Assembly (NCBI RefSeq): GCF_001194135.2
Contig: NC_068981.1
Coordinates: 4,823,417-4,887,416 of the forward strand
From: Octopus bimaculoides
Lineage: Eukaryota
DNA: 64,000 nt
Direction of reading: 5' to 3'
In this document: positions 5,976 through 61,009 of the stretch, piece by piece
Layout of the letters: every line of letters begins with the position of its first letter
How positions within the stretch are numbered: the first letter of the stretch is position 1
Notes under the pieces: model-generated
Database searches by the model: none
Told to the model about the DNA's origin: nothing
What the model saw: only the letters and a program-made list of their open reading frames with translations
Translations under genes and position numbers: made by a program

Positions 5976-6589
5976 TTAGCTCCCCCCCCCTTTTCAATGC
6001 CATTCACAAACACGACGAATGGTTCATAACCACTGAGTTAATCTGTTCTTGTTCATATGTAAAGAAGTTTGATTAGGGATGTCATCGTTTTTAACCTCTC
6101 ATTGGAATTTTGATGTAATGGCNNNNNNNNNNNNNNNNNNNNNNNNNNNNNNNNNNNNNNNNNNNNNNNNNNNNNNNNNNNNNNNNNNNNNNNNNNNNNN
6201 NNNNNNNNNNNNNNNNNNNNNNNNNNNNNNNNNNNNNNNNNNNNNNNNNNNNNNNNNNNNNNNNNNNNNNNNNNNNNNNNNNNNNNNNNNNNNNNNNNNN
6301 NNNNNNNNNNNNNNNNNNNNNNNNNNNNNNNNNNNNNNNNNNNNNNNNNNNNNNNNNNNNNNNNNNNNNNNNNNNNNNNNNNNNNNNNNNNNNNNNNNNN
6401 NNNNNNNNNNNNNNNNNNNNNNNNNNNNNNNNNNNNNNNNNNNNNNNNNNNNNNNNNNNNNNNNNNNNNNNNNNNNNNNNNNNNNNNNNNNNNNNNNNNN
6501 NNNNNNNNNNNNNNNNNNNNNNNNNNNNNNNNNNNNNNNNNNNNNNNNNNNNNNNNNNNNNNNNNNNNNNNNNNNNNNNNNNNNNNNNN

Positions 6590-6675
<86 letters not shown>

Positions 6676-6964
6676 TTAGTATATTGTTCCGTGATGGTAA
6701 AACACACGCATATGTGTGTGTGTGTGTGTACGTACACACATATACACAGACAAAATATGTTGAACCATATCTCTTAAAACAAGGGGAAAGCACACGACCA
6801 TATTATATATGTATAAGCTGGTAGAGCGCTATATCGTTTAATACACGAACAGACGTTGGATAAAGTCTCGAAGATCAGATCAACTTAAGGTGATGGCTAT
6901 ATTTTTGAAGCCATCTTACAAACAAAGCTGTTATTTCATTGTTTGGCGAAAGGAATATTTTATC

Positions 6965-7272
6965 ATTATCATTACTACTACTATCATTATTATTATTAGT
7001 AGTAGTAGTAGTTGTAGTAGTAGTAGTAGTAGTAGTAGCAGCAGCAGTAGCAGTTATAGTGGTAGTAGTAGCAGCAGCAACGCCGCAGAGATGGTGGTGC
7101 TTATAGCATGATGGCGACGTTATTAATATAAAGTGGTAGTAGTAGTTGTTGTTGTAGAGTGTGGGTGGTGGTGGTGGTGGCAACGGGGATTGTTCAGCGG
7201 TGACGCGGGTGATGTAGTGTAGTAGCAGTAGCAGCAGCAGCGACGGTGACGTGGGTGGCAATGGTAGTGGCG

Positions 7273-7314
<42 letters not shown>

Positions 7315-7400
7315 ACGAGACGGATGTGCTTATAATAGAAGTGATGTTACCACCGTTCAATATAAGATGATTGTTATTATTAATAGTGATAATAATAATA
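6965..7400. repeat. Compound trinucleotide microsatellite (AGT)n/(AGC)n/(GGT)n
   Basis: Directly visible. Confidence 0.9.
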
Positions 7401-9229
7401 GCATTGCTAGCTTGTGCAAGCAATGATTGCTTTACAACTGTTGCTGTTGCAATGATTGTTGTTTTAATTCCGTACCAGTGTCGTAATATCTATGACAAAG
7501 CTAAATAATTTCGGCCAAGTTATCGTTCTTGGTTTGTTATTTGTCCGAGCAAGACGTACCGTGTGTGTAGCCATTGCAATCTCTTTCAGATTGTGATACG
7601 AGTTTATTTCATTGATGTTCACTTGAAACTTTTTATAAATTGTTTGGTTGGAAGACGGTTGCAGTTTTGGGAAATCTCTATGTCGAAGGAGTTTTTAGTG
7701 AAAAACTTAAGGGTTGGGTAACTGTACAAAAGAAGAGAGACGGGTGTGTTAGAAAAACTGGGATGGACGTTGGTATGCAGCTTGTTCGGGGAAGAAGCCA
7801 TTGAAATAAGAGTAGAAAAATAGGCAGTATTCAGTATGGCGACAAGATTTTAAAACCAGTCAGATGACCTGTGTTTTCGTGGTTATTTTGAATGTTGAAG
7901 GTCCACTCTTAAGGTGTATGCTTGTGCTTTGTGCCAGATCAGCAACGGTTTGAAGAGAAAGCCTTGCTCTTGAAGGAATTATAATAGTGCCAATCAGATA
8001 GGTTAACCAAATGATAATGGAAACGACGGTGCAATTATCGAATTAGAAAATACAAATTTAACACCATTTACTTATTCTTGGTGCATTTCAGACGCATTGC
8101 TAAAAATCCTCTCAAAAGTCAAACTCGAAATAAAATTATTTTTTCTCTTTTGACTAAACGTAAAAAGATGATTCCTCTCAGTTGCGTAATGTGGGTTTCG
8201 GCTGCCGTGTGCAATGGCCAAACTGGTCGCCTTTTTTCCTCAAACCTAACATACCTTCGACTACAGCAAACCCTCGTGTGTATAGTAGCTACTCCACTCT
8301 ACGCCAATCCTTCCTCTCCAGACAGCTAAAACACTGCGCCATTAAAGTCTATTAGTCCAAACTCATCACCACTATTACAGACGTTAAATTCTCCTTTTGT
8401 CTAATCTACAGAGGAAACCATCGAGTATTCCTTTCAAGAATTTCCTTTCTCTAGACACAGACGACATCTTATGCGCTAACTTCGTTCAAATATATTTGAC
8501 ACTGAATTAAAATGGTCGAATGTAATGTAACCAGTGAAGCTGTCATAAGAACACAAGTCATATGCTGATGCTGTTGTTGTTGTTGTTGTGGTGGTGGTGG
8601 TGGTGGTGGTGGTAGTAGCTGTTGTTGTGATAATGGTGGTGGTGGTGGTGGTGGTGGTGGTGGTGATGGAGATATCTTATCCCCCAGGTCAACTTTGTTC
8701 AAGCAGACATGATCAAAGGCATTNNNNNNNNNNNNNNNNNNNNNNNNNNNNNNNNNNNNNNNNNNNNNNNNNNNNNNNNNNNNNNNNNNNNNNNNNNNNN
8801 NNNNNNNNNNNNNNNNNNNNNNNNNNNNNNNNNNNNNNNNNNNNNNNNNNNNNNNNNNNNNNNGAGAGAGAGAGAGAGAGTGAATGTGTGTGTGTGTGTG
8901 TATGTGTGTATGTATGTATGTGTGTGAGTGCATATGCGTGTGTGTATGTATATTCTAAACACACGTGTGCATGTATATATATATATATATCCGTGTGTAT
9001 GTTTATAGGCTGCATTGTGTAACATTGTGCTCTACCATTAAGGCAGTAGAGTCCATAGGTGCTATATAACGGGTTGAGCGACCACGTTTTCTCGTGTGTT
9101 ACCTGTAAGTGAAAATATCTATGGTCAAGACGGTAAGGTGCTGAATAACTAACCATTGGGCCATTGGATCAATATTGTCACTAGCGCCGTGTCTGTGGCA
9201 GAGACTGGATTCATTTAGCTGTTTGTCGT

Positions 9230-25950: not shown

Positions 25951-28900
25951 ATGGAAAGTTGCAACACTAGCCTGGATGTTGGAGAAATGAAAAATAATTG
26001 CAGCCAAGAAAGTGCCGACAGCATATCTGACCTAGAAACTTCTGTGAAGAACGGCGTTGGAAAGAATTTAGTTCCTGGGGAAAAATCTGATTTCTTGAGA
26101 AATAAGTCTAAGGGAGAACAACAGCAGAATGTCTCTTTAAACGAAGATAAAATTGATAACGAAGAAAGCAAAGAAAATCAGCTTAGTAAAATCAAAAGTC
26201 CAGTAGATAAGATTACTGTAGAAGACGAATCTGACGTAATAATTACTTCTAGTGAGAAGTTGGAGAAAGCAGAAAAGAAATCTGATAGTCCTTCTAAAGG
26301 GGAAACTGACCCTCTAAAAGTTGTCATTAAATTAACTGACAGTAACAAGAAGAACACCAACAACGACGACGACGACGACGAAGTGGAAGTTTTAAATACT
26401 GCAGCGAAGATCAACTCGGCAAACAACGGCCTTGAATCGGTTGCAAAAGAGAATCAAAGAAAAGTTAATGATCTAAATCCTTGTGAAAGATCTCGTCTTC
26501 ATTTGCAGTCTTCAAATTGTCAATCAAATTCTCTTCTCACTTCAAACAGCAATAACCAGCTGCGATCTGGGCCTTTCAGTGCTAACAACAATCATAATAA
26601 GGTTCAGCAGCCACCTGAGCTGCCGTCTTTCAACCTGGCTAACCAACAGAACAATTATGCTCCGCTATCTGGAGCTAAAATTCCCAAACCTCATATACCT
26701 TCGATGTCTCCACTAAACAGTTCTCAATCCAGTATGAATTCTTCAAAAGGAGGTACGTCTCCTTTCTGCTCGTCACCTAATTTTTCTAATTTCAACATCA
26801 ACGATAACGATGATTCTAAAGATACTTTGCCAAATTCCAGTGTTGAACAGATTGAGGCTATCAAGAGAGAAACGCTTCTACATTCTATGTCAACCAAGGC
26901 TCAACGCATCTTGAAAGCAAAAGCCAAGGCAGAGCTATTGATGAAAGCTGATGAAAAACTAGGTCCGCTAGCCAACTTCCTGAACAACTTGGGGCTTGAC
27001 ATTGTTAAACAATCTGTTTATCAAGAAGCCATCCATATTCAGTCTCGGAAGCAGCAGTCTGGCAAACTAACAGATGTTGAGTGTTCTCAACTGGACAAGA
27101 TGCGGACATCCTGCAGGGAGCTTGCTGAAAAACTGAAACATCTTAAGCTCAGCTACAGGAAGTGCAAATTATGCAATTTTGTTAGTGAGTCGGTCAATGT
27201 CCATTTTTGGCATCGTGAACATCCACATGTTAACAAACGAGAAGACTTTTGTTGTTCCTATTGTGATTTCCTGACCAGAAACAACCTGGCTTTCAACTTT
27301 CATATGGAGGCTGAGCACAACATCAAAGGACGAAGTATGGAAAAGCCAGCGTTTTGGCAATGTAGTCTCTGCCCATTTGAACACAACTCTAAGAGTAAAC
27401 TAACGCAGCACAGGTGGAAGTGTGAAAAGAACTTTGAAATGAAAACTCACTTGTCGCCGTCCCCTGAAACTGATATCAATTATAGCTTGTACGGGGTATT
27501 CTACCTCTCCGAGAAAGAAGAGGCCCTGAAGGCTATTGCTTTGCATAAAGCTAAACAAAATCAGATCAAAGCGCAGCAGGCTCAGTTTAAGTTGCAACAG
27601 CAACAAGCAGCTGCGAATCGAGCAAGCTACTTCAATGCTAATAAAATTTCTCCTATTCAGTCGAAACCAATGAATCAAGGAAATATGAATGTAAACCAAA
27701 GAATTCCTGTTTTAGTGCATCCCAAAATAGGTCAACCGCAAGTGCCAGGGAACCAGATGAGAAATTTCAATGCAAGAGGGAACATGCAACCGAATCGATT
27801 CCAGCAACAGTCTCCAATTCGGCCCCTGGTTAACCATCTTGGAATGAAACACTTCTCTCCTGGCATGCCCCAAAATAATATCCGTGGAACATCTTTACTC
27901 AACCCAAACAAGGGACATCAGAACCTAAGCCTGATGCGGACACAACTTCCTGTGAAAGATTTACTCAACATGCATCAACAGGTCAAAGGCCATAATGTAG
28001 TTACTGCCAAGTCTTTAGCCAACCAGAAATTAATACCTTCCAACAATCAGCCCATTAATGATGTTAGTGAGTTTGAAATCTGTGAGCTGTGTGGCGGCTA
28101 TGTTAAAGATCGGGAAGCTCTGCGTATTCACTTCTTCTACGCTCATAGAGTTGAGATGCCTGCACTTATGTTCGAGAAACCATGCCCTCCTCTTTTCTGT
28201 GATGTTTGTGAAAAGAAATTCTGGACTAGCCAAGGCCTCCAGAAACACAGGGTTTCCTTGAAACATTATGCCAAGGGTTCTCTCTCTCAAGTATGCATCC
28301 TTTGTGGTTGTCTTGTTTCTCATCTGCTTAATCATATGACTGACACCCATCAGCTCAACTTACAGGACTTCCTGAACCAAAAGCGATGCATTGTTTGTGG
28401 GAAGGTGTGCCAGAGCCGATCTGAAACCGAGATCCACATGGCTGCCAGTCACGGTATTTTAGTGAAGCGTAGTAACTCGAATTCAATGGATGCCAAGGTG
28501 AAACTTGACGAGAAAGGAGGTGGTAATTCCATGGCTATGGCAACCAAAACCGGAACTGCCACCCCTGGCTCGTCGGCCTCTCAGTTGGTAAAAGGCAACT
28601 ACTGTGTGTTTTGCAAGGTACCGTTTGCGAGCAATGCTGAATTGACACAACATTGTCTACTCGTACATAAGGCTTGCAAAAAATGCGGCATGGTTTTGCC
28701 AGCAGAGGGTTCTCTTGGTAACCACAGATGTCAGATAAGCATTCCAACGGTGAAAGCTTGCAGTGTGTGTAAGAAGCAGATACTCATTCAAGAGTTTATA
28801 AAGCACGTTGAAGAGAGGCATTTGAAAAAATGTTCTATCAAACTCAAGCGGCTCAACTCAGAAGAGATCAACGCAGAAATGAAAGAGAAAAAATTACACC

Positions 28901-29502
28901 TGGATATATCTGGTGGTGCTTCTCCTTGTTCAATATCTGGCAACATTGATTCCGGGCAAAACAGCGTTTCTGGGGATGTAGGTAGCAATAGTTCAGCTCG
29001 ATCACATAAACGAAAACCAGAAGAATCCGATAGAGCAGCGAAACGCAGTAAAATTTCTCTAGATAATGATAGTAATTTTGAGGCTAAATCCGAATCTATA
29101 TCTATAAGTGATAGTGATGATGATGTGGAAGTTATTAATGCTGGCAGTAGCTCTGCTGATAAGACTAAATTAGATTACCCCAAAAATGGTTCTGTTGATA
29201 AAAAGAAAGAAAGTAGTAAGACTGGCAGTGTTTCCGAATCTGCAGCACCTGAGAAGATGGATGTCGATGCGTCTCAAGAAAGTGAAGAGGAGAGCGACTG
29301 GAGTCAGAAAGGAACAGCTGCTGACAAGGACAAACAGGATGAGCAGGAAAACGCAACCGCTAATAATAATAATAACAATAACAATAATGGTTCTACTTCT
29401 GCAAAACTGGAGTCTTCCAAAGAATCTGATGAAAGCTATGATAGTAAGAAAAGTCCTGTGAAATCAGGGAGTGACAAAAACATTACAGACAGCACCGAAT
29501 GA
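25951..29502 (+). CDS. MEP-1: MEP-1-like (MOG-interacting and ectopic P-granules protein 1) C2H2 zinc-finger protein, 1183 aa, single coding exon
   Basis: 3552-bp uninterrupted ORF with GGGATGG start. It has three fingers at aa 405-491, a Q/N/P-rich linker and seven fingers at aa 711-957. Motifs FLNNLGLDIV, FHMEAEHNIKG...QCSLCPFE..SKSKL..H..KC and ICELCGGYVKDREALRIH match my recollection of Drosophila MEP-1. A bipartite NLS lies at aa 1020-1034. The CDS is near certain; the orthology call (~0.75) needs BLAST. Confidence 0.92.
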   Translation: MESCNTSLDVGEMKNNCSQESADSISDLETSVKNGVGKNLVPGEKSDFLRNKSKGEQQQNVSLNEDKIDNEESKENQLSKIKSPVDKITVEDESDVIITSSEKLEKAEKKSDSPSKGETDPLKVVIKLTDSNKKNTNNDDDDDEVEVLNTAAKINSANNGLESVAKENQRKVNDLNPCERSRLHLQSSNCQSNSLLTSNSNNQLRSGPFSANNNHNKVQQPPELPSFNLANQQNNYAPLSGAKIPKPHIPSMSPLNSSQSSMNSSKGGTSPFCSSPNFSNFNINDNDDSKDTLPNSSVEQIEAIKRETLLHSMSTKAQRILKAKAKAELLMKADEKLGPLANFLNNLGLDIVKQSVYQEAIHIQSRKQQSGKLTDVECSQLDKMRTSCRELAEKLKHLKLSYRKCKLCNFVSESVNVHFWHREHPHVNKREDFCCSYCDFLTRNNLAFNFHMEAEHNIKGRSMEKPAFWQCSLCPFEHNSKSKLTQHRWKCEKNFEMKTHLSPSPETDINYSLYGVFYLSEKEEALKAIALHKAKQNQIKAQQAQFKLQQQQAAANRASYFNANKISPIQSKPMNQGNMNVNQRIPVLVHPKIGQPQVPGNQMRNFNARGNMQPNRFQQQSPIRPLVNHLGMKHFSPGMPQNNIRGTSLLNPNKGHQNLSLMRTQLPVKDLLNMHQQVKGHNVVTAKSLANQKLIPSNNQPINDVSEFEICELCGGYVKDREALRIHFFYAHRVEMPALMFEKPCPPLFCDVCEKKFWTSQGLQKHRVSLKHYAKGSLSQVCILCGCLVSHLLNHMTDTHQLNLQDFLNQKRCIVCGKVCQSRSETEIHMAASHGILVKRSNSNSMDAKVKLDEKGGGNSMAMATKTGTATPGSSASQLVKGNYCVFCKVPFASNAELTQHCLLVHKACKKCGMVLPAEGSLGNHRCQISIPTVKACSVCKKQILIQEFIKHVEERHLKKCSIKLKRLNSEEINAEMKEKKLHLDISGGASPCSISGNIDSGQNSVSGDVGSNSSARSHKRKPEESDRAAKRSKISLDNDSNFEAKSESISISDSDDDVEVINAGSSSADKTKLDYPKNGSVDKKKESSKTGSVSESAAPEKMDVDASQESEEESDWSQKGTAADKDKQDEQENATANNNNNNNNNGSTSAKLESSKESDESYDSKKSPVKSGSDKNITDSTE

Positions 29503-35950: not shown

Positions 35951-36209
35951 GCACCTAGAGAAATATAGTAACAAAAGTTACTGTTAATTGTGTTCCGGAT
36001 TTGGATGTACATCTTGAGAAACGGTCATTAGGAATTACTGCGATAATTGGTTTAGCTTCAGAATTCCATGGATTGATGTAAGAATGACTTTGACAAATCA
36101 ACAAAACTAAAGTGGAAACTGGAATCCATATTTGATCCACAAAGGGTTGTGGCTGAGAAGTAAATTTCTGAACTACCTCATTCACCTGCACCTATTGCAC
36201 ACACATATA

Positions 36210-36750
36210 CGAGGGTGAGTCAAAAAGTAATGCCATCTTGTTTATAATTACCAACACAGGAACATGTATCATACATTAAAATGAAGCTGGTCCTCTGTGG
36301 ATCACATCCCTACTTCTCAATAGAGTCACCGTTTCTCTCAATAGCAATGTTCCACCTTCCAATGAGAGCATGTATCCCTGCCCCGTAAAATTCTGTTGAC
36401 TGTTCTTTGAGCCACTTCTTCACTAGTTTTCACTTCCTCATCACTGGAATAATGTTTGCCTCTCAAACCCTCTTTCATGGGGCCGAAGAGATGATAGTCC
36501 ACTGACAAGGAAGTGAAAACTGTAGTGAAGAAGTGGCTCAAAGAACAGTCAACAGAATTTTACGGGGCAGAGATACATGCTCTCATTCAAAGGTGGAACA
36601 TTGCTACTGAGAGAAACGGTGACTATGTTGAGAAGTAGGGATGTGATCCACAGAGGACCAGCTTCATTTTAATGTATGATACATGTTCCTCTGTTGGTAA
36701 TTATAAACAAAGTCCTAAACAAAATGGCATTACTTTTTGACTCACCCTCG
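36210..36750. mobile_element. Mariner-derived fold-back element made of two right ends (541 bp)
   Basis: Ends TA|CGAGGGTGAGTCAAAAAGTAATGCCAT and ATGGCATTACTTTTTGACTCACCCTCG|TA. Both ~240-bp arms carry the transposase 3' end: DYHLFGPMKEGLRGKHYSSDEEVKT on the minus strand and KKWLKEQSTEFY...RWNIA..RNGDYVEK* on the plus strand. Confidence 0.92.
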
Positions 36751-37434
36751 TATATATATATATATATATGTGTATATGTATTCATCATCATTTAACATCC
36801 ATTTTTCCTTGCAGTTCACTAAGGTCGATTTTCTGCGGCTGTATGCTCTTTCAGTCATCAACCCTCACCTGTTACAAATTAAGGTAACATTTTTTTTAGT
36901 CCTTGAAATCTACACAACACACACCAACCAAGCACATGTATGGCATTAGCATCATCCTCATCGTCGTGGCATCTGCTATTTCCATGCTTGCTCATGCTGG
37001 AGCAATTCCTGTCATCCCACCCTCACCTCTTTCCAACTAAGAGGTTGAATAATCCCCTAGGTCTACCAAACAGCCACAACAGCTGGGGCATGGTTATACA
37101 ATGGTCCAGAAGTAAGGGGCAGCAGCTGGATGAGCCCTTTGCGTACAAAGATAACACCTCAAGACACCCAGATGTTCTTAGAGACCCTAATGAACAACTG
37201 TTGTTTACAGTCAATGAACACCCGTAAGGATGAAGGGAAATATGAACTCGCAAAGACACATATAAGCATATATTATATTCACACATGCACGTGTGTATGT
37301 GTGTATATTGTCCATTTTTCCATGTTGGCATGGGTTGGACGGTTTGATAGAATCCAATGAGCCCCAGGGCTGCGTCAAACTCCAATGTCAGCTTTGGCTT
37401 GGTTTCTACAGCTAGAAACCATTCCTAGCTTTTT

Positions 37435-41205: not shown

Positions 41206-41851
41206 TGTAACAGGAATTCGAAACCGGATCCCTGGATATGTGGTCAAATACCACAACCAAACCACAGTAGTTTCACATGATCAGTCTACTAAGCAATCAG
41301 TGTCAAGCCTTCATGTAATTCAGTCTTCTAGAATCTTCTTCTTGTACCCTATATAAAGGTGCCATTTGGCACCTAAACTCTTTACAGAGCACTGAGACCA
41401 GCCAACTCATTTATACATTTCACCTCTTGCCAAGTGGCTGAGTAACACATGCCTCCACTCCAGCCAAGCAGCTCTGACAAATTGCAGAATGTTCAGGTAC
41501 CTGGTAGTTGTGTTTCCATTCTTGCCACAGCCAGACGACCCATGAAGACAGTTAAGATAGATGACAGGAATCTCCATCACCAAGAATATGGCACAATTGT
41601 TTCCAGTTATGTCAAGCGACCCACATGTTGCTTGCCATAAACTCCAATCAGTATGTCTCACCCAGTATGTAATTATTGGTGTTGTTATTTGTAAAAGACC
41701 AACACAGGTTACCTGTGTACAATAATAAAATCTTCTGTTAATTGTTTGCAGATGTTGTCGGTTACTTTCTCATGCAGCCCAAGAAATACATTTTCATTCA
41801 TCAACTTGACCAGTCATCACCACAGACCAGCCAACAAACACACTCGCGACA
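41206..41851 (+). mobile_element. Solo LTR (Ty3/Gypsy-like), 646 bp
   Basis: TG...CA termini (TGTAACAGG ... CTCGCGACA), 4-bp TSD AGCT (41202-05, 41852-55), TATATAAA at 41350 and AATAAA at 41724. Homologous copies lie at 4161-4378 and 56611-57179. Confidence 0.8.
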
Positions 41852-41942
41852 AGCTCTTTATTTCAACTCTATATTTAAAAGATGAGGAATTATGTACATT
41901 ATTTACATTTGATGGATATTTGTCCTCATCTTGTTTGTTGTT

Positions 41943-41988
41943 AACACAACGTTTCGGCTGATATACCCTCCAGCCTTCATCAGGTGTC
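41943..41988 (-). ncRNA. Minimal type I hammerhead ribozyme (intact)
   Basis: Minus strand: GACAC (stem I) - CUGAUGA - extra A - GGCUG/loop GAGGGUAUAU/CAGCC (stem II) - GAAA - palindromic ACGU stem III - GUU cleavage triplet - GUGUU (stem I partner). Predicted cut between 41948 and 41947. Confidence 0.8.
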
Positions 41989-42035
41989 TTGGGGAAATTT
42001 CGAACCTGGGTTCTCATTCCTAAGGTATTTTTCGA

Positions 42036-42079
<44 letters not shown>

Positions 42080-42278
42080 TCACTGCCTGGAATCAAACTT
42101 GGAATCTTGGGGTTAGTAGCCTGCACTCTTAACCACTATGTCATATGCCCGTGGGTTAAGTGTACAGGCTATTAACCCCAAGATTCCGAGTTCAATTCCA
42201 GTCAGTGACCTGAATAATAATAATAATAACATCGAAAAATACCTTAGGAATGAGAACCCAGGTTTGAGATTTCCCCAA

Positions 42279-42321
42279 GACACCTGATGAAGGCTGGAGG
42301 GTATATCAGCCGAAACATGTT
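42279..42321 (+). pseudogene. Disrupted hammerhead copy in the right arm
   Basis: CTGATGA, stem II and GAAAC are intact, but CGTTGTGTT is reduced to CATGTT, so the stem I partner is lost. Confidence 0.7.
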
Positions 42322-43149
42322 AACAACAAACAAGATGAGGACAAATATCTGTCAAATGTAAATAAAGCTGTTTATTTTATAGGAAACAGGATGAAGACAC
42401 TAATCACAAACAGGTGGAGATTACAAATATAGATTTCCTGATTATGGAGAGTGTGTGTTCTGGTCATGTACACTGGATAATTAATAATGGCCAAGAATTT
42501 ATTAGTTTTGAGAAATTATTTATTTTATATTATGATTGCTGAATCAACATCATTAGTTATAGGGATCAATCACTGGTTTATGGTATTTGTGATGGTGAGC
42601 AGCAAGGGAGTGTATGTAGTATGGCACAGAACAAATATATCAAGGGACTTCATTCGTGAATCACTGGTTTTCAATTCTCTTGCTGATTTCGACATACATA
42701 CAAACATATATACACATGTATGTATGTACGTATATATATATATATACATATACACACACATATATGTGTGAGTGTGTGTACATTTTACAGATATAACTTT
42801 TCAAGTATATGGATTGCACAATGATGTTTCAAGCATAGAAATTGGAAAAGAAAAACTTGCAAAAGTTACGGAAAATGGTGCAAACAAATTTGAGGAGGAT
42901 TGGAATGTCCAAATGCCTCCATTTTTNNNNNNNNNNCTCGGAAAAAATTTCAAGAAAATTCAGCAAAAAATATCCATTTTTCAGAAATTTCAGATATGTA
43001 TTCTATCAAGAAGAAAGAAAATCGTGGGGCACCAATCTGAAGATATGCCCTGAAATTATCGTTCGTCTTCACCTGTCTCATTAAACATATAAAGGGGAGG
43101 TAACTTAGTCTAGTTTTGTTGAATGCCGTTTAAATTGTCAGTAAATAAT

Positions 43150-43545
43150 TACTCTTTTACTTGTTTCAGTCATTTGACTGTGGCCATGCTGGGACACCAC
43201 CTTTAGTCGAGTAAATCGACCCCAGGACTTATTCTATCGGTCTCTTTTGCCGAACCACTAGATAAGTTACGGGGACATAAACACACCACCATCGGTTGTC
43301 AAGTGATGTTGGGGGGACAAACAGACACACAAACACACACCACTTAGCTAGTGGTTCGGCAAAAGAGACCGATATATATATATGCGACAGGGCTCTTTCA
43401 GTTTCCGTCTACCAAATCCACTCACATGGTTTTGATCTGTCTGAGGCTATAGTAGAAGACACTTGCCCAAGATGCCACGCAGTGGGAATGAACCCAGAAC
43501 CATGTGGTTGGTAAGCAAGTTACCACACAGCCACTCCTGCGCCTA
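43150..43545 (-). mobile_element. SINE family A, full length, with an internal 33-bp inverted duplication
   Basis: Runs from the tail TACTCTTTTACTTGTTTCAG to the head ...TACCACACAGCCACTCCTGCGCC. 43235-43267 is repeated in inverse orientation at 43342-43374. Confidence 0.88.
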
Positions 43546-43649
43546 TGAAAAGAAAATTATTATATTTGTTTAGGGAGTTTCAGGAAGGTTTAATAATGCG
43601 TGCGTACATACATACATACATACATATATAGGACACTATAATAAAATCT

Positions 43650-47199: not shown

Positions 47200-48258
47200 T
47201 AGGGCCTCTCACTCAGAGTAAAAGGCAGACTGTATGATGCATGTGTACGAACAGCCATGCTTCATGGCAGTGAAACATGGGCCGTGACTGCTGAAGACAT
47301 GCGTAGGCTCGCAAGGAGTGAAGCCAGTATGCTCCAATGGATGTGTAATGTCAGTGTGCATACTAGACAGAGTGTAAATATCTTGAGAGAAAAGTTGAAC
47401 CTAAGAAGCATCAGTTGTGGTGTGCAAGAGAGACGATTGCGCTGGTATGGTCATGTAGCGAGAATGGATGAGGATAGCTGTGTGAAAAAGTGCCACACCC
47501 TAGCAGTGGAGGGAACCTGTGGAAGAGGTAGGCCCAGAAAGACCTGGGATGAGGTGGTGAGGCAAGACCTTTNNNNNNNNNNNNNNNNNNNNNNNNNNNN
47601 NNNNNNNNNNNNNNNNNNNNNNNNNNNNNNNNNNNNNNNNNNNNNNNNNNNNNNNNNNNNNNNNNNNNNNNNNNNNNNNNNNNNNNNNNNNNNNNNNNNN
47701 NNNNNNNNNNNNNNNNNNNNNNNNNNNNNNNNNNNNNNNNNNNNNNNNNNNNNNNNNNNNNNNGTGTAGCCAGCCCACTTATGCGTACCTTTCCTTCCTT
47801 GGACACTAAACTCCGCTTGCGAAGACCTGTTGAGGCAAGTGATATCGAAATCGAACTAAATTCGACGACTGGCACCCATGCCAACGTCATCTCCTTCATT
47901 GGATACGAAACTCAGCTTGCGAAGACTTGTTGGGGCAAGCAAAATCGTGATGGCACCTGTGCCCAGCGTCGCCTTTCTGGCACTTGTGCCCACAGCATGT
48001 GTAAGGACTTTCGTAAAAAACACCATTTGAGCGTGGCCATTGCCAGTATCGCCTGACTGGCCCTCGTGCTGGTGGCACGTAAAAGCGCCTACTACACTCT
48101 CGGAGTGGTTGGTGTTAGGAAGGGCATCTAGCTGTAGAAACTCTGCCAAATCAGATTGGAGCCTGGTGTAGCCATCGGGTTTCACCAGTCCTCAGTCAAA
48201 TCGTCCAACCCAGGCTAGCATAGAAAGCGGATGTTAAACGATGATGATGATGATGATA
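47200..48258 (+). mobile_element. RTE (BovB-like) LINE 3' portion, spanning a gap
   Basis: GLSLRVKGRLYDACVRTAMLHGSETW...QERRLRWYGHVARM...GRGRPRKTWDEVV; same 3' UTR and (GAT)n tail as 44790-45600. Confidence 0.9.
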
Positions 48259-52478: not shown

Positions 52479-53562
52479 TTGAAACTCACAACAAACATGA
52501 GAGTGCAGTTAGGTGGTGATGCGCACCTGGAGAACTTCTGCAGGCAATTAATGGATATTGGAAACGGTGTTGTAATTGTTAAGCAGGATGGGAAGATTAG
52601 TTTATCCTTTGGCAATTTGGCGTCAAATATACACGAACTATTAGCGAGAGTTTTCTCCAATCTGAACATACAGTTCAAAGACCATTGTTAGCTGAGAAAA
52701 CGTGCAAATTTGGCGCCAAAAAATGTCGCAGTAGATGGCGTAAAGAATCACCTTCTGGAACAACTGCCTGGTGATCGTCGAACATAGAAGTCAATTGATG
52801 CTGTGCTCCACACCAATGATGCTGTCCATTATCCCGTTGAATTCTTCAAAAGCTTTGCACCTTCAGGTCTACCACCGCATGAATTGCATCTAAAGGTTGG
52901 AGCCCCAGTTATGCTTTTAAGAAACCTCGATCCTCCAAAATTATGCAATGGCACAAGACTTATTATCAAAAAATTGATGCAGATAGTGTTGGAGGCAACA
53001 ATACTGACTGGGAAAGCAAGTGGTGAAGAAGTTTTCCATTCCATAGATTCCTCTGATTCCTTCCGACACACAAATTGATTTCAAAAGGCTACAATTCCCA
53101 CTGAGATTAAGCTTTGCAATGAGCATCAACGAAGCACAGAGTCAGACATTGGAAGTGGTGAGCCTTAATCTTGCAGAACCTGCTTTTTCTCATGGACAGC
53201 TCTATGTCGGAGGCTCTAGAGTTGGAAATCTGGAAAATTTATTCATCTATGACCCAACGGCAAAACCAGAAACATTGTGTATCATGAAGCCTTGCACGAC
53301 TGAAATTTTGGAACAAAGATGCCTCTCCCTCCGAAAACCTCTCTTGTCAGCCCCCGACAATCTTTTTCACCAACCTCCGACAACCCCTCTCGCCAACCCC
53401 CAACAATCTCTCCCTCCTCCAGATGACAGTTTTTTGTACATTTTCATGATGGAAAATATGCCTTTTGTGGCAGTTATAATGAAATTGGTTTCTTATATCA
53501 GAGTAATAAGGTGTTTCAATAGAACATCTTTACCCCTGGGAATTACCGGGTACACCAGCTAT
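52479..53562 (+). mobile_element. Helitron remnant: PIF1-type helicase C-terminus and 3' terminus
   Basis: LKLTTNMRVQ...YPVEF...PSGLPPHELHLKVGAPVMLLRNLDPPKLCNGTRL...FAMSINEAQSQTL...FSHGQLYVGGSRV with stops and frameshifts. A 3' end CCCCTGGGAATTACCGGG...CAGCTA(T) lies near 53560. Confidence 0.9.
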
Positions 53563-53608
<46 letters not shown>

Positions 53609-56294: not shown

Positions 56295-56470
56295 CTGGTC
56301 TCAGGTGGTGTTGGCTGATGAATGAAAATATGTTTCTTGGGCTGTGTGAAGAAGTAACTGAATGTCACCCACAAACATTCAACAGAAGATTTTATTGTTG
56401 CACATAAAAAACAAACTGCATTGGTCTTTTACAAAAAGAGAACAGCAATAATTACAGGCTGGGAGAGAAG
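56295..56470 (-). mobile_element. 3' half (R-U5-like) fragment of the solo-LTR family
   Basis: Direct repeat of 56630-56800 (period about 344 bp); its reverse matches 41690-41840. Confidence 0.7.
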
Positions 56471-56610: not shown

Positions 56611-57179
56611 GTTACAGTTGTTTTGTTTGCTGGTCTTAGGAGGTGACAACAGGTTGAGTTGATGAATGAAAATTTGTTTCTTGGGCTGTGTGAAGAAGTA
56701 ACTGAACGCCACCCACAAATATTCAACAGAAGATTTTATTGTCACACATAAAAACAAACCGTATTGGCCTTTTTTACAAATGACAACACCAATAATTATT
56801 GACTGAGAGAGAGAGTTTACAGTAAGCTTACTGATACAGCAACAGGCAGTTTGCTTAACATAACTGGAAACAATTGTGCTATATTCATGGTGGTGGTGGT
56901 TCTTGGTTGTCTGGCTGCACCAATTGTCTTAGCCATCTTCCTGTTAAAAACTGGATGCCATCTGGGGAGGCAGGAATGGTGAAACTTAAAGCTCAACATT
57001 CTGGTATTAATTACTGCTAAAAGGGGCCTTTTATAAGGCACAAGAAGATTCTATAAGACTGAATCTTATAATAGCTTGATGCTAATTGGTTAGTGAATTG
57101 AGCAATTATATGAAACCATAGTGGTTTGCTAGAGATGTCTGACTGTATAATCAAGGGATTCATTTTCAAATCCCCACCA
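56611..57179 (-). mobile_element. Solo LTR, same family as 41206-41851
   Basis: Reverse strand is collinear with the 41.2-kb copy: CAAACCAC, CCAAT (57085-89), TATAAAA (57029-35), GCACAATTGTTTCCAGTTATG and AATAAAATCTTCTGTT (56735-40). Confidence 0.75.
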
Positions 57180-57388
57180 TGGGGTTAATGTTATACATGA
57201 CAATATTCTGACCCTTGCTACATGTTAAAAAGTTAGGGGTTTTGTGTCACATGATGCTTAATATTATAAATTCAAATTACAACGAAAGTAAACAAACAAA
57301 CGAGGTTTGCTTTTAGAACCGTTGAGATGTCTTAGAAAGTTAAAGAAGTGATTTTTTAAATTCTCAAACGCAGGATAATGCTAATAAT

Positions 57389-57540
57389 ATTAAGCCTGGG
57401 CATGATAAACTACCCCTATTTTGCAGAAAAAGTGCTGGCAGCCAGCTATGAGACTCGAACCCACACCCCTGTGATTACACATCGCGGTGCTCTGACCTTT
57501 TTCTGCAAAATAGGGGTAGTTTATCCTGTTCAGGTTTAAT
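57389..57540. mobile_element. 44-bp inverted repeats enclosing a tRNA(Thr-TGT)-like fragment
   Basis: Arms 57389-57432 and 57497-57540 match at 40/44 nt. The loop on the minus strand reads GGTCAGAGCACCGCGATGTGTAATCACAGGGGTGTGGGTTCGAGTCTC, with an intact B box. Confidence 0.75.
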
Positions 57541-58209
57541 GGGTTTAAAGACAGATATACTCAGAAAATCCACTCACAAGGCTTTGGTTGGCCCAAGGCT
57601 ATAGAAGACACTTGCCCAAGTTGCTATGCAGTGGGACTGAAACCAAAACCATTTGGCTGGGAAGCTGGCTTCTTACCACACAGCCATGGTTGCACTTAAC
57701 ATTTTCATTCAGGCTTTTGAAAAAAAAGGGCTGATGAAGAATCCCAAACATGGAAAGAAACACGTCTTAGAGAAAATTTTCTACCAATTCTCTGGATTAA
57801 TATTGTTCATGGTTGAATTATTATTGTTGTTGTTGTTGTTGTTAGCTTTGACTGAGTAGACATATGATTAGTCCAGCCACGACCATCCTATCTTATCGTG
57901 TATCTAGCATGACATTATTCAATGTGTGCTTCTCATTTTCTTAAGATGCCGGTGAAGATATGACGGAGATTTGGCTGTCATTTCTAGCAGGTCAATTGAC
58001 TCCATAAAGACTCCCTTACTTGACCAGTCAGACAGTGGCTATTTAGTAGCAGGTTTCTCTTTACTTCCACCACACTCTTACATCTGACCACCACCACCAT
58101 TAACACCACCACCACCACCACCAAGTTCATTTATGGTATTAACACACACACACACACACANNNNNNNNNNTAACACCACCACCACCACCACCAAGTTCAT
58201 TTATGGTAT

Positions 58210-59088: not shown

Positions 59089-60713
59089 CAGGGTGCGTAT
59101 GCTATTTGAGAACTCTCTTTACTCTTTTACTTGTTTCAGTCATTTGACTGTGGCCATGCTGGAGCACCACCTTTAGTTGAGCAAATCGACCCCAGGACTT
59201 ATTCTTTGTAAGCCTAGTTCTTATTCTATCGGTCTCTTTTGCCGAACTGCTAAGTGACGGAGACATAAACACACCAGCATCTGTTGTCAAGCAATGCTAG
59301 GGGGACAAACACAGACACACAAACACACACACACATATATATATATATACATATATGTGACAGGCTTCTTTCAGTTTCCGTCTACCAAATCCACTCACAA
59401 GGCTTTGGTTGGCCCAAGGCTATAGTAGAAGACACTTACCCAAGATGTCATGCAGTGGGACTGAACCCAGAACCATGTGGCTGGTAAGCAAGCTAGTTAC
59501 CACACAGCCACTCCTGTGCCTGATAATGTGATATTTTTTAGTTATTATTGTGTTTAAATTAACTTTATGTCATGAACGTTTCAGAAAATAATAACAGCAG
59601 ACACCCAGCTTACTCAATGAATGAAGAGGCATGCAGTAATTTTGGCCTGAAAGACTGAGCACAGCAATTTGGAGATAGGTCAGTTTTTAAAAGTTGCCAG
59701 ATCTTTTGTCTACAAAGTTCACAAGGAATTAGAAGTCTCAAATGGAAAAGTATCACCAGTATTGAAACACAAAAAGCATTCTTAATGTTCCAATACCCTT
59801 AGAACCCCCAAATTCATTTGACAAGTTCAGCAGGTCTTTGATGGAAATCCCAGAAAATCCATGAGGTCAATTGCAAAAGATCTCCATATGTCAGAAAGGA
59901 CAATCAGAAATGTTGTCCATGGAGACATCTGCCATGGGTCTTACGTGGGGAAGAGAGGTCAATTCATGTCAAAAGAAAAAAAGAAAGAAAATAAAGAATT
60001 GTTTGTTGAGATCTAAAAGGCCATTAAACAAAGTTAAAAATGGAGAATGTGACATGATTTGGTTTTTCTCAGATGAGAAAAACTTTGACCAAGACCAGAA
60101 GAAATGACAGATGGTTATGTTCAGGCCCTTCTGAAGTTCCACCTGTCATGCACACAAAATGTCCTGCAACTGTCATGGCTTTTTGAGTTGTCAGTAACGA
60201 AGGGCAGTGTGATGCCTTCTCACTTCTTTCCCCAAGGCCTTAAAGTTAACTCTCCTGGTTACATTGAGGTCCTGGAATCAGCTGTCAAGTGTGCCATCAC
60301 ATGAGGCTCATGCAACCCCAATAAAGGATGGCTAACAGTTTTTATGATCACATAACCCTTAACATTTAGCCTTCAAACTCATCAGATCTCAATCCATTCG
60401 AGCATTAAGTGTGGAGCATTGTTGAGAAAGAGGTCAGTGAACATCGCCATAACACCAACGATTCTTTGAAAGCTGCCATAGTCAAAAGAATGCCCAATAT
60501 GAACCAAGGTCATTTAATTCAGGTAAGACGATGATTCAGATCTCACATAGAAGCAGTTATTGGTGCTGAAGGTTGTTACATTAAATAACATTACAAAGAA
60601 GACAATCTAGTTTATATTTACAATTTTTTCTCATTAATAAAGATTTGCTTTCTGTTATTATATGTATTTTTTTCTAAAAAACAAATTTGTCTTCAAATAC
60701 CTTACACGCCCTG
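59089..60713 (+). mobile_element. Decayed maT/DD37D-like Tc1/mariner element
   Basis: TA|CAGGGTGCGTATGCTATTTGA ... TCAAATACCTTACACGCCCTG|TA. Transposase pieces: NPRKSMRSIAKDLHMSERTIRNVVH, IWFFSDEKNFDQDQK, HFFPQGLKVNS.GYIEVLE, NSSDLNP, EAVIGAEG. Confidence 0.85.
59113..59521 (-). mobile_element. SINE family A, full length, nested in the maT element
   Basis: Tail CTCTTTTACTCTTTTAC through head ...CCACACAGCCACTCCTGTGCC, located directly inside the left TIR. Confidence 0.9.
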
Positions 60714-60715
60714 TA

Positions 60716-60890
60716 CCATGGGCTTCTTTCAGTTTCCATCTTCCAAACCCACTCAACTTTTGGTCAACTTGATACTATAGCAGTAGTATAGGAGAAGACG
60801 CTTGCTCAAGATGTTACAAAGTGGGACTGAACCCCAAACCACATAGTTGGGAGTCAAACTTCTTAACCACACGGCCATGCCAGTAGATAC
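60716..60890 (-). mobile_element. SINE family A, 5' half (apparent host of the maT insertion)
   Basis: GGGCTTCTTTCAGTTTCC...GTGGGACTGAACCCC...CTTAACCACACGGCCATGCC begins right after the TA at 60714-15. Confidence 0.7.
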
Positions 60891-61009
60891 AGGAAGAAAA
60901 CCTTAGGAGAAATGATGAATCCCTGTGGTACACGTTTCCAGAAAGTACAGATGCTCAAAACGTTGGACTATAGATGTTCAAAAAGTCTCTCCACAGTGAA
61001 TTTTTTTTC

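What the first reader, a model, noticed from the sequence alone, without database searches (positions are those of the whole stretch)
41866..42154. A Pol III SINE that ends in a ribozyme: tRNA head fused to a Penelope-type hammerhead tail
Seen, reading leftwards from 42154: A box TGACATAGTGG, an anticodon-like loop CTACTAA, B box AGTTTGATTCC, (AAT)n, ~55 nt, the hammerhead, then an AT-rich tail. The two arms show complementary CpG decay in the B box (TTTG vs TTCA), which points to an ancestral GAGTTCGATTCC. Established: SINE tails normally come from a partner LINE, while CTGATGA...CCGAAACG ends are typical of Penelope-like pLTRs. Inference: this is a non-autonomous tRNA-promoter element mobilised by a Penelope-like RT, with self-cleavage setting the RNA end. 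I cannot tell whether it is already in Repbase or Dfam.
Basis: partly seen in the sequence, partly recalled or inferred. Interest (0 to 1): 0.9.

Follow-up and report, generated by a model that had tools for sequence, protein, structure and literature searches.

The report
Octopus SINE with Penelope-type hammerhead tail
This is a short mobile element of Octopus bimaculoides with a tRNA-like promoter head and a tail carrying the minimal hammerhead motif typical of Penelope-like retrotransposons; it was inserted as a head-to-head twin in the way those elements insert, so it is a likely example of a SINE copied by a Penelope-like enzyme rather than by a LINE.

Summary
On the minus strand, 41866-42150 is a 285-nt element. 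It has an A box at positions 8-18, an anticodon-like loop at 32-38 and a B box at 52-62, which is exact tRNA numbering. Then come (AAT)13, a 49-nt centre, a minimal type-I hammerhead motif, a 10-bp terminal stem-loop, and no poly(A).

My hammerhead descriptor hits once in the window (null about 0.006 per 64 kb). It also hits the 3' UTR of a real damselfly Penelope-like element with the same build.

Abutting the head is an inverted twin (42151-42364) that lacks the first ~15 and last 33 nt. The pair is flanked by a 15-bp target-site duplication (13/15). An inverted truncated twin and a 30-40-bp extension at one end are published marks of Penelope-like insertion.

Two Octopus bimaculoides proteins carry other copies. 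One joins head, (AAT)n, centre and hammerhead start; the other carries the tail to its end.

The idea that self-cleavage sets the RNA end is not supported: copies run 82 nt past the predicted cleavage site. The partner element, Pol III transcription, cleavage activity and copy number were not tested.

The closest precedent is the schistosome Sm-alpha element. I rate this a new variant of a known kind, of moderate interest.

The parts
41851..41865 (.). Left target-site duplication, AAGCTCTTTATTTCA
   Evidence: It matches 42365-42379 at 13 of 15 positions, exactly at the outer ends of the pair. P is about 0.005 against window-sampled pairs and 0.0008 against shuffles.
41866..42150 (-). Full-length SINE copy, 285 nt
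   Evidence: The 5' end GGG lies 7 nt before the A box, which corresponds to tRNA position 1. The 3' end ...AAATATAGAG is shared with the copy encoded in P0001.
42076..42150 (-). tRNA-like head, 75 nt: A box 42133-42143 (positions 8-18), loop CTACTAA 42113-42119 (32-38), B box 42089-42099 (52-62)
   Evidence: The motif positions equal tRNA numbering. The cloverleaf is not recovered.
42038..42075 (-). Internal (AAT)n microsatellite, about 13 units
   Evidence: The inverted twin has about 5 units and the P0002 copy has 9 (a run of 9 isoleucines).
41989..42037 (-). Central 49-nt segment between the microsatellite and the hammerhead motif
   Evidence: The two arms differ here at only two positions, both in the CpG-bearing GGTTCGAAAT. 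The P0002 copy reads ...GKFRTWVLIPKVFFD across it, the same as the window.
41943..41988 (-). Minimal type-I hammerhead motif: helix I 5' strand 41984-41988; CUGAUGA 41977-41983; unpaired A plus helix II and loop 41956-41976; GAAA 41952-41955; ACGU 41949-41952; predicted cleavage between 41948 and 41947; helix I 3' strand 41943-41947
   Evidence: This is the only descriptor hit in the window. Helices I and II are in the minimum-energy fold of the local RNA. A real Penelope-like element 3' UTR has the same build.
41879..41932 (-). 3'-terminal stem-loop: 10-bp stem AAGAUGAGGA/UCCUCAUCUU with a 34-nt loop, followed by the only T4 run of the sense strand (41877-41880)
   Evidence: The stem is present in both the minimum-energy and centroid folds. 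The 80-nt tail has z = -2.4, and 4 of 200 shuffles fold as well.
41866..41898 (-). 33-nt terminal extension, present on this arm only; it holds the 3' half of the terminal stem
   Evidence: It is absent from the twin but belongs to the family, since P0001 reads ...NVNNVHNSSSLKYR across it.
42151..42364 (+). Inverted twin copy, lacking the first ~15 nt (most of the A box) and the last 33 nt
   Evidence: 200 of 212 aligned bases are identical to the left copy. Ten of the 12 differences are transitions and 8 lie at CpG sites. It abuts the 5' end of the left copy with no spacer.
42284..42316 (+). Hammerhead core of the twin: CUGAUGA to GAAAC is intact, but ACGUUGUGUU has become ACAUGUU, so helix III and helix I are broken
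   Evidence: It fails the descriptor.
42365..42379 (.). Right target-site duplication, AAGCTGTTTATTTTA

Best explanation
What it is. The locus holds one insertion of a tRNA-derived SINE family of Octopus bimaculoides. The roughly 170-nt 3' module of this SINE imitates the 3' UTR of a Penelope-like element (PLE). That module holds a minimal, dimer-type hammerhead motif followed by a long-looped terminal hairpin, and it has no poly(A).

Proposed working (inferred):
- The internal A and B boxes drive Pol III transcription of the roughly 285-nt RNA.
- A PLE reverse transcriptase and GIY-YIG endonuclease recognises the 3' module in trans.
- The endonuclease nicks the target with a 15-bp stagger and copies the RNA by target-primed reverse transcription.
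- Either priming from both nicks or a snap-back of the first cDNA produced two copies: a full-length copy and an inverted copy truncated at both ends. They were joined head to head, with the 33-nt terminal piece kept on one side only.

Role of the hammerhead (inferred). It did not define the 3' end of the copied RNA. More likely it is part of the recognised 3' structure, or a dimer-dependent processing signal inherited from the parent PLE.

Shown: the anatomy, the chance levels, the single-event signature and the existence of other copies. Inferred: Pol III transcription, PLE dependence and any catalysis.
For: Head:
- A box, loop and B box sit at tRNA positions 8-18, 32-38 and 52-62.
- Such box pairs are about 17 times commoner in the window than by chance, and the other four hits are true SINE heads.

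Hammerhead motif:
- It is the single descriptor hit in the window, against a null of 0.005-0.007.
- It has the features listed for PLE minimal hammerheads in PMC4209133: an unpaired nucleotide 5' of stem II, a long helix II, a helix I of 4-5 bp, and a minimal palindromic helix III.
- The same descriptor finds CUGAUGA-U-helix II-GAAACGU-C 57 nt after the stop codon of an ORF with reverse-transcriptase and GIY-YIG similarity in damselfly locus L002. That motif is also followed by a long-looped hairpin.

Insertion signature:
- There is an inverted 5'-truncated copy at the 5' end and a 33-nt extension at one end only. Both are described for PLEs in PMC8557442.
- Pairs of minimal hammerheads 100-700 bp apart on opposite strands are reported in PMC4209133.
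- A 15-bp target-site duplication brackets the whole pair.
- The arms are 94% identical and differ mostly by CpG decay, as expected for twins born together.
- There is no poly(A) and no terminal simple repeat.

Family:
- P0002 carries head, (AAT)9, centre and CUGAUGA, and lies at another locus, because the NUP42 exons are not in the window.
- P0001 carries the tail through the 33-nt extension.

Genome: the window is O. bimaculoides GCA_001194135.2, chromosome CM046601.1. The related O. vulgaris has many unclassified SINE families and recently active Penelope families (PMC13282606).
Against: - No autonomous PLE sharing the tail was found, and none could be fetched. There is no PLE coding remnant in the window.
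- Only three loci are known, two of them only as translated fragments, so copy number and how often head and tail occur together are unknown.
- Neither Rfam nor ARAGORN recognises the head as a tRNA.
- No Rfam hammerhead model scores.
- PLE minimal hammerheads cleave poorly even as dimers in vitro (PMC4209133), so catalysis here is doubtful.
- The target-site duplication has 2 mismatches in 15, more than the arms' non-CpG divergence of about 2% predicts.
- The only T4 run lies 11 nt before the 3' end, so a Pol III transcript that terminated there would not carry the last bases that the copies contain.
- The positive control is a single PLE. Three other PLE loci gave no descriptor hit.
Confidence: 0.6

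Rival explanations
1. It is an ordinary LINE-dependent tRNA SINE. The hammerhead-like string is a chance or functionless motif, and the inverted pair arose from two separate insertions or from a later DNA-level inverted duplication.
For: - No partner was identified.
- A LINE-like coding fragment lies nearby at 47257-47571, recognised only from memory; Pfam does not support it.
- RTE and other LINEs are abundant in octopus genomes (PMC8967140).
- Rfam gives no hammerhead hit.
- The target-site duplication is imperfect.
Against: - The motif's expected chance rate is about 0.006 per 64 kb, and it carries PLE-specific extras that the core search did not require.
- The 3' end has no poly(A) or short tandem repeat.
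- The tail matches nothing else in the window, including the LINE fragment.
- A target-site duplication around the pair as a whole argues for one event.
- Twin priming by L1-type LINEs inverts a segment but does not duplicate the 3' region (established knowledge).
Confidence: 0.17
2. It is not a SINE at all. Both arms are heavily 5'-truncated 3' ends (pLTR fragments) of an autonomous Penelope-like element, and the 'tRNA head' is merely part of that element's 3' region.
For: - PMC4209133 states that most dispersed minimal hammerheads are probably truncated PLEs, and that pairs occur on opposite strands 100-700 bp apart.
- PLE insertions are often 5'-truncated.
- No cloverleaf is detected.
Against: - The A box, loop and B box fall at exact tRNA coordinates, counted from a 5' end that begins GGG.
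- The independent P0002 copy keeps the same head-to-body junction.
- In the damselfly PLE the hammerhead starts only 57 nt after the stop codon. Here about 160 nt of non-coding head and microsatellite precede it, with stop codons in all frames.
- No frame of the element matches any PLE protein.
Confidence: 0.1
3. It is a metazoan non-LTR retrozyme. Tandem transcripts would be cut by the hammerhead, ligated into circular RNA and copied by rolling-circle reverse transcription.
For: - It is a hammerhead-bearing non-coding element of 285 nt, within the 170-400 nt range of retrozymes.
- Retrozymes are proposed to depend on PLEs (PMC7229834; bioRxiv 10.64898/2026.07.22.740005).
- A 15-bp target-site duplication was reported for Nematostella repeats.
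Against: - There is no tandem array in the window.
- The hammerhead is the minimal PLE type, not the canonical type with loop-loop contacts.
- The RNA is not unusually self-paired (z = -0.26).
- Copy ends do not coincide with the cleavage site, as unit-length circle products would suggest.
Confidence: 0.06
4. It is a foldback or MITE-type DNA transposon with terminal inverted repeats of about 215 bp.
For: The arms form an inverted repeat that is 94% complementary and folds at -350 kcal/mol. A true foldback or MITE lies elsewhere in the window, at 36205-36755.
Against: - The arms are unequal: one lacks 15 nt at the inner end and 33 nt at the outer end.
- A 15-bp target-site duplication is long for a cut-and-paste element.
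- The independent copy in P0001 runs through the 3' end into unrelated flank, as a single arm would.
Confidence: 0.03

Closest known systems
Schistosome Sm-alpha / Sj-alpha SINE-like elements (Ferbeyre et al. 1998; Laha et al. 2000; reviewed in PMC6765202, and shown with a tRNA sequence in PMC4918200 fig. 7b)
   Same: Both are short non-coding retroposons that combine a tRNA-related Pol III promoter with a type-I hammerhead motif. Both sit in a genome that also holds hammerhead-bearing Penelope-like elements.
   Different: - Sm-alpha carries a canonical, efficiently cleaving hammerhead with a real helix III and is often tandemly arrayed. The octopus element has the minimal palindromic-helix-III type and is dispersed, with an inverted twin.
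- The phylum differs (Mollusca versus Platyhelminthes).
- Sequence similarity was not tested, because no Sm-alpha sequence was available.
Minimal hammerheads of Penelope-like element pLTRs and 3' UTRs (Cervera & de la Pena 2014, PMC4209133; Lunse et al. 2017)
   Same: - The core is CUGAUGA...GAAA, with an unpaired nucleotide 5' of helix II, a long helix II, a short helix I and helix III reduced to a palindrome (ACGU).
- The motif is placed 80-130 nt before the element's end.
- Paired motifs occur on opposite strands.
- The damselfly PLE in L002 has the same GAAACGU-H build.
   Different: Here no reverse transcriptase/endonuclease ORF precedes the motif. A tRNA-like head and a microsatellite do instead.
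Penelope-like element insertion architecture (Evgen'ev & Arkhipova 2005; Craig et al. 2021, PMC8557442)
   Same: It shows an inverted 5'-truncated copy abutting the 5' end, a 30-40-bp extension at one end only, a target-site duplication of variable length and no poly(A).
   Different: There is no partial tandem (pLTR) in this locus. The unit is 285 nt rather than 3-4 kb.
Metazoan non-LTR retrozymes (PMC7229834; bioRxiv 10.64898/2026.07.22.740005) and short non-autonomous Penelope derivatives (for example in Heliconius, PMC6685494; Chlamys MRC1, PMC8557442)
   Same: All are non-autonomous, hammerhead-bearing or PLE-tailed elements thought to borrow PLE enzymes.
   Different: Those elements have no Pol III/tRNA head. 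Retrozymes are tandem, strongly self-paired and carry canonical hammerheads.
Classical tRNA-derived SINEs of octopus (OK, OR1, OR2 of Ohshima & Okada 1994; the abundant SINE present four times in this window)
   Same: It has a tRNA-type A/B-box head, an internal microsatellite and a short non-coding body.
   Different: nhmmer finds no similarity between its head or tail and the other family in the window. The tail is PLE-like rather than LINE-like.

Membership tests
tRNA-derived SINE (SINE2) | Internal Pol III promoter: A box and B box with 30-60 nt spacing near the 5' end | tested here: met
   TGACATAGTGG has 1 mismatch to TRGCNNAGTGG. AGTTTGATTCC follows 33 nt later with 2 mismatches, one of which (the CpG site) is restored in the other copies. 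There are 5 such pairs in the window against 0.3 expected. Their positions are 8-18 and 52-62.
tRNA-derived SINE (SINE2) | Head recognisably derived from a tRNA (cloverleaf, or a match to a tRNA model) | tested here: inconclusive
   The Rfam tRNA model gives no hit at E<=10 on 86 nt. ARAGORN finds nothing down to a 60% threshold, even on the CpG-restored head, whereas the other SINE's head is called at 70%. However, head length (75 nt) and the positions of A box, loop and B box equal tRNA numbering.
tRNA-derived SINE (SINE2) | Short, non-coding, dispersed copies flanked by target-site duplications | tested here: inconclusive
   The element is 285 nt with stops in all frames. A 15-bp target-site duplication is present. 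Only three loci are known: the window, P0001 and P0002. Genome-wide copy number could not be obtained.
tRNA-derived SINE (SINE2) | 3' region shared with an autonomous partner retroelement of the same genome | not testable with these tools
   No octopus PLE or LINE 3' ends could be fetched. The protein searches returned only non-octopus PLEs. Collection scans found nothing.
tRNA-derived SINE (SINE2) | Transcription by RNA polymerase III | not testable with these tools
   Only promoter motifs and a single T4 run near the 3' end (41877-41880) can be read from the sequence.
Minimal type-I hammerhead of Penelope-like elements | Catalytic core CUGANGA ... GAAA with a U-H cleavage site and helices I and II | tested here: met
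   The motif reads CUGAUGA, 6-bp helix II, GAAA, U-U cleavage site and 5-bp helix I (GACAC/GUGUU). It is the one hit in the window, against a null of 0.005. Both helices are in the local minimum-energy fold.
Minimal type-I hammerhead of Penelope-like elements | PLE-type extras: unpaired nucleotide 5' of stem II, helix III reduced to a short palindrome, short helix I | tested here: met
   There is an unpaired A after CUGAUGA, helix III is ACGU, and helix I is 5 bp. These are as described in PMC4209133 and as seen in damselfly PLE locus L002.
Minimal type-I hammerhead of Penelope-like elements | Location in the pLTR or 3' UTR of an element encoding reverse transcriptase and GIY-YIG endonuclease | tested here: not met
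   No PLE coding similarity exists anywhere in the window. The motif is preceded by a tRNA-like head instead. This is the point of difference, not a failure of the mechanism.
Minimal type-I hammerhead of Penelope-like elements | Self-cleavage, as a dimer | not testable with these tools
   The proposed double-hammerhead pairing is geometrically consistent, with no crossing pairs. Activity needs a bench assay.
Rfam hammerhead families (canonical types I, II, III, HH9, HH10) | Score against the covariance models, which include helix III | tested here: not met
   There is no hammerhead hit at E<=10 on 621 nt or on 76 nt. This is expected for a motif without a hairpin helix III.
Penelope-like-element-mobilised insertion | Inverted 5'-truncated copy adjacent to the 5' end, forming an inverted repeat | tested here: met
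   The twin at 42151-42364 abuts the 5' end at 42150 and lacks about 15 nt of head. The feature is described in PMC8557442.
Penelope-like-element-mobilised insertion | [quoted passage not shown] | tested here: met
   The 33 nt at 41866-41898 are on the left arm only. They belong to the family, as P0001 shows.
Penelope-like-element-mobilised insertion | One target-site duplication bracketing the whole unit | tested here: met
   The 15-bp repeat matches at 13 of 15 positions, with P of 0.0008-0.005. The match is imperfect, so I treat it as probable rather than certain.
Metazoan non-LTR retrozyme | Tandem repeats of 170-400 nt, each with a canonical type-I hammerhead, and a strongly self-paired monomer RNA | tested here: not met
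   There is no tandem copy. The hammerhead is minimal, not canonical. The monomer fold has z = -0.26.

The most novel reading that the evidence does not exclude
This may be the first clear member of a SINE class whose partner is a Penelope-like element rather than a LINE. On this reading, a Pol III-transcribed, tRNA-derived RNA is mobilised in trans because its 3' module copies the PLE 3' UTR: a minimal hammerhead plus a terminal hairpin. That would show three things. PLE enzymes can act on foreign Pol III transcripts. The hammerhead-plus-hairpin module, not cleavage, is what the enzyme recognises. The inverted-twin product is intrinsic to PLE reverse transcription even on a 285-nt template.
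Probability: 0.45. Interest if true: 0.7.

Novelty: new variant of a known kind. Interest (0 to 1): 0.55.

Why it matters
SINEs are classified by the LINE clade that copies them, and no SINE class tied to Penelope-like elements appeared in the papers I could search. Two open questions about these elements are what their hammerheads do and how their odd insertion products arise (inverted twins, one-sided tails).

A 285-nt Pol III-type passenger showing the same products would be a small, tractable template for both questions. It separates 3'-end recognition from coding sequence. It also already shows that the copied RNA ran 82 nt past the predicted cleavage site.

SINEs make up about 12% of an octopus genome, most of them unclassified (PMC13282606), and Penelope families are recently active there, so the partnership could be quantitatively important. 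Each such insertion also creates a roughly 215-bp perfect hairpin if transcribed. That is a ready source of double-stranded RNA in an animal known for heavy A-to-I editing; this last point is inference only.

Tried and rejected
- Rfam at gathering and at E<=10, on the whole window, on 621 nt and on slices of 76-86 nt: no tRNA and no hammerhead.
- ARAGORN on the window, and on the CpG-restored head at thresholds from 100% to 60%: nothing.
- BLAST and nhmmer of head and tail against the window: no third copy and no similarity to the other SINE family or to the LINE fragment.
- Exact-pattern scans: viral contigs with the hammerhead pattern, bacterial/archaeal genomes with the hammerhead pattern, and metagenomes with the hammerhead and centre patterns. 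All gave 0.
- Fishing for copies as spurious ORFs worked only slightly. The sense-frame tail gave P0001. A concatenate of all other open frames gave P0002. A full HMMER search of 1.84 billion representatives gave only P0002 again, plus a weak match at 30% identity (P0123, E = 4e-5) that I did not pursue. Neither P0001 nor P0002 is in the contig index, so their DNA could not be read.
- To reach an octopus PLE, I searched with a PLE reverse-transcriptase consensus written from memory, joined to a LINE-like peptide from the window.
- tblastn of that consensus against the window and L001: no PLE remnant.
- My first, stricter hammerhead descriptor missed all the control PLE loci. Relaxing helix I to 3 bp and requiring a palindromic helix III recovered one of them.
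- Looking for an empty site: the left flank is a repeat with two relatives in the window, but their homology stops 27 nt before the insertion point.
- Full-text search for six sequence strings of the element in papers: none found.
- Pfam on four neighbouring ORFs: nothing.
- Considered and rejected: the GUUGU/ACAAC hairpin as a true helix III (A15.1-U16.1 cannot form), and L1-style twin priming (it does not duplicate the 3' region).
Full report
**What is there**

Reading the minus strand from 42150 down to 41866 gives a 285-nt unit. Its parts, in sense order, are:
- GGGCATA, then the A box TGACATAGTGG at positions 8-18.
- A seven-base loop CTACTAA at positions 32-38.
- The B box AGTTTGATTCC at positions 52-62.
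- (AAT)13 at positions 76-113.
- A 49-nt centre.
- The string GACAC-CUGAUGA-A-GGCUGG-AGGGUAUA-UCAGCC-GAA-ACGU-U|GUGUU at positions 163-208.
- A 10-bp stem AAGAUGAGGA/UCCUCAUCUU closing a 34-nt loop.
- The only T4 run of the strand, then AAATATAGAG.

The one correction is that the element begins at 42150. From 42151 a second copy runs rightwards on the plus strand to 42364.

**Is it more than chance?**

- An A box (at most 1 mismatch) followed 25-50 nt later by a B box (at most 2 mismatches) occurs five times in the window, against 0.3 expected. The other four are heads of a different, abundant tRNA-type SINE.
- In the full-length copy the three head motifs fall at exactly the tRNA positions for A box, anticodon loop and B box.
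- The cloverleaf itself is gone. ARAGORN finds nothing even at a 60% threshold on a CpG-restored head, and the Rfam tRNA model does not score on an 86-nt slice.
- I therefore call the head tRNA-like by promoter motifs, length and register, not by fold.

**The hammerhead motif**

I wrote a descriptor after the minimal type-I motif of Cervera and de la Pena (PMC4209133). It hits once in the window, at this site, with 0.005-0.007 hits expected per 64 kb. Helices I and II are part of the minimum-energy fold of the local RNA.

No Rfam hammerhead model scores. That is expected, because helix III here is only the palindrome ACGU, which can pair only between two molecules.

The extras that paper lists for Penelope-like elements are all present: one unpaired nucleotide 5' of stem II, a long helix II and a helix I of 4-5 bp.

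As a positive control I fetched loci of real Penelope-like elements. In a damselfly locus the same descriptor finds CUGAUGA-U-helix II-GAAACGU-C. It lies 57 nt after the stop codon of an ORF with reverse-transcriptase and GIY-YIG similarity, and it is again followed by a long-looped hairpin. Three other control loci gave no hit, so the control is a single case.

**The insertion itself**

- The two copies lie head to head with no spacer.
- The right copy lacks the first ~15 nt and the last 33 nt of the left one.
- Over 212 aligned bases the arms are 94.3% identical.
- The pair as a whole is bracketed by AAGCTCTTTATTTCA (41851-41865) and AAGCTGTTTATTTTA (42365-42379). This is a 13-of-15 match, with P about 0.005 against window-sampled pairs and 0.0008 against shuffles.

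One target-site duplication around both arms means one integration event. Two features are described as typical of Penelope-like insertions by Craig et al. (PMC8557442): an inverted 5'-truncated copy abutting the 5' end, and a 30-40-bp extension present at one end only. Minimal hammerheads in pairs on opposite strands, 100-700 bp apart, were noted in PMC4209133. There is no poly(A) and no terminal simple repeat.

L1-type twin priming does not fit, because both arms contain the same 3' region.

**Is it a family?**

The window is 100% identical to Octopus bimaculoides GCA_001194135.2, chromosome CM046601.1. It contains no third copy.

Translating the element and searching protein collections gave two O. 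bimaculoides entries.
- P0001 (A0A0L8FV75) reads MRTQVRNFPKTPDDGWRVYQLKSCINNKQDDKYPSNVNNVHNSSSLKYR. This is the tail in the sense frame, running through the 33-nt extension to ...AAATATAGA. The extension therefore belongs to the family, and the 3' end is at about 41866.
- P0002 is a NUP42 gene model (A0A0L8FR24). It ends in ...PSSGVLGKFRTWVLIPKVFFDAIIIIIIIIIQVTAWNRTRNLGVSSLCS. This is an antisense copy with CUGAUGA, the centre, (AAT)9, the B box and the anticodon-like region in the same order.
- The other NUP42 exons are not in the window, so P0002's copy is a separate locus. Its NRTRN confirms the ancestral CCGAGTTCGATTCC.

Head and tail are therefore joined in at least two independent loci. 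This is thin evidence, but it argues against a chance chimera.

**How it most likely works**

The best-supported reading has these steps:
- The unit is a Pol III-type SINE whose 3' module of about 170 nt mimics the 3' UTR of a Penelope-like element.
- That element's reverse transcriptase and endonuclease copied it by target-primed reverse transcription at a 15-bp staggered cut.
- Either priming from both nicks or a snap-back of the first cDNA gave the inverted, doubly truncated twin.

The anatomy, the statistics and the single-event signature are shown. Pol III transcription, dependence on a Penelope-like enzyme and catalysis are inferred.

The predicted cleavage site (sense 203|204, window 41948|41947) lies 82 nt before the 3' end, and both this locus and P0001 keep that stretch. 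The RNAs that were copied had therefore not been cut there.

The motif is more plausibly part of the recognised 3' structure, or a dimer-dependent signal inherited from the parent element. Published minimal hammerheads of this type cleave poorly even as dimers. In the twin the region has already decayed, from ACGUUGUGUU to ACAUGUU.

The monomer RNA is not unusually structured (z = -0.26), unlike retrozyme circles. The terminal hairpin is modestly better than chance (z = -2.4).

**What is known**

- A Pol III/tRNA-related promoter joined to a hammerhead has been known since 1998 in the schistosome Sm-alpha and Sj-alpha elements (PMC6765202; PMC4918200).
- Non-autonomous relatives of Penelope-like elements are known as retrozymes (PMC7229834; a 2026 preprint), as short Penelope derivatives in butterflies and as Chlamys MRC1.
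- In the searchable literature I found no description of a tRNA-headed SINE with a Penelope-type minimal hammerhead tail in cephalopods or elsewhere. Recent octopus repeat papers mention no ribozyme.
- The family may well sit among the roughly 900 unclassified SINE families reported for O. vulgaris. Repbase, Dfam and SINEBase could not be consulted.

**Limits**

- I could not obtain further octopus DNA, so copy number, consensus, the frequency of twins and, above all, a partner element sharing the tail remain untested.
- The attempt to fetch octopus Penelope-like elements used a consensus written from memory and returned only elements of other animals.
- The target-site duplication is imperfect.
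- The positive control is one locus.

**Verdict**

I rate it a new variant of a known kind, with interest 0.55.

Noticed in passing
window 43100-43553, 57290-57706, 59090-59530, 60460-60897 (all minus strand; A boxes at 43533, 57686, 59510, 60877): At least four copies of a different, abundant tRNA-headed SINE (head ...GGAGTGGCTGTGTGGTAA...GGTTCAGTCCC...). At least two of the copies carry an internal TA/TG microsatellite. ARAGORN calls its head tRNA-like at a 70% threshold. All four lie in the same orientation.
   Followed up: partly
window 36205-36755: A foldback or MITE-like element. Its inverted arms total about 228 nt and are 96-98% complementary, around a 97-nt centre. The ends read ACGAGGGTGAGTCAAAAAGTAATGCC and it sits next to a (TA)n tract. 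The ends look mariner-like from memory; this was not tested.
   Followed up: partly
window 57406-57520 (minus strand), inside the SINE copy that starts at 57686: A piece resembling a tRNA 3' half, with the B box GGTTCGAGTCTC, is bracketed by an inverted repeat of about 25 nt (CCCCTATTTTGCAGAAAAAG ... CTTTTTCTGCAAAATAGGGG). It is apparently a nested insertion of yet another small element.
   Followed up: no
window 25951-29502 (+): A 1183-aa single-exon ORF that is an annotated gene in GCA_001194135.2. It is rich in Cys/His pairs that suggest zinc fingers, but no Pfam family passes (the best is 16.9 bits against a cut-off of 27).
   Followed up: partly
P0002 (O. bimaculoides A0A0L8FR24, 'Nucleoporin NUP42'), residues 145-194: The C-terminal 50 residues of this gene model are an antisense copy of the SINE. 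The join lies just before ...PSSG, at a site that reads CCCTCCAG|CC in the window copy and looks like a splice acceptor. This is either real exonisation of the SINE or an annotation artefact.
   Followed up: partly
window 41565-41838, with relatives at 56622-56905 and 56316-56468 (minus strand): The DNA just left of the SINE pair is itself a repeat, 74-78% identical to two other places in the window. Its homology ends 27 nt before the insertion point, so it gives no empty site.
   Followed up: yes
window 41866-42364 as one transcript: If transcribed through, the twin folds into a near-perfect hairpin of about 215 bp (-350 kcal/mol, z = -39). That would be a potential double-stranded RNA substrate, for example for A-to-I editing or small-RNA pathways. 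Whether the locus is transcribed is unknown.
   Followed up: partly
window 47257-47571 (+) and 53119-53604 (+): From memory, these ORF fragments look like the C-terminal part of a LINE reverse transcriptase (...RLRWYGHVARM...) and of a helicase of Helitron type. Pfam found nothing for either. The first is cut by an assembly gap.
   Followed up: partly
L002 7503-7545 (damselfly, GCA_921293095.2 OV121110.1): A Penelope-like element ORF (5995-7446, with reverse-transcriptase and GIY-YIG similarity) is followed 57 nt later by a minimal hammerhead, CUGAUGA-U-...-GAAACGU-C, and then by a 9-bp long-looped hairpin. I used it as a positive control. The other control loci (L003-L007) showed no such motif within 1.1 kb downstream.
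   Followed up: partly
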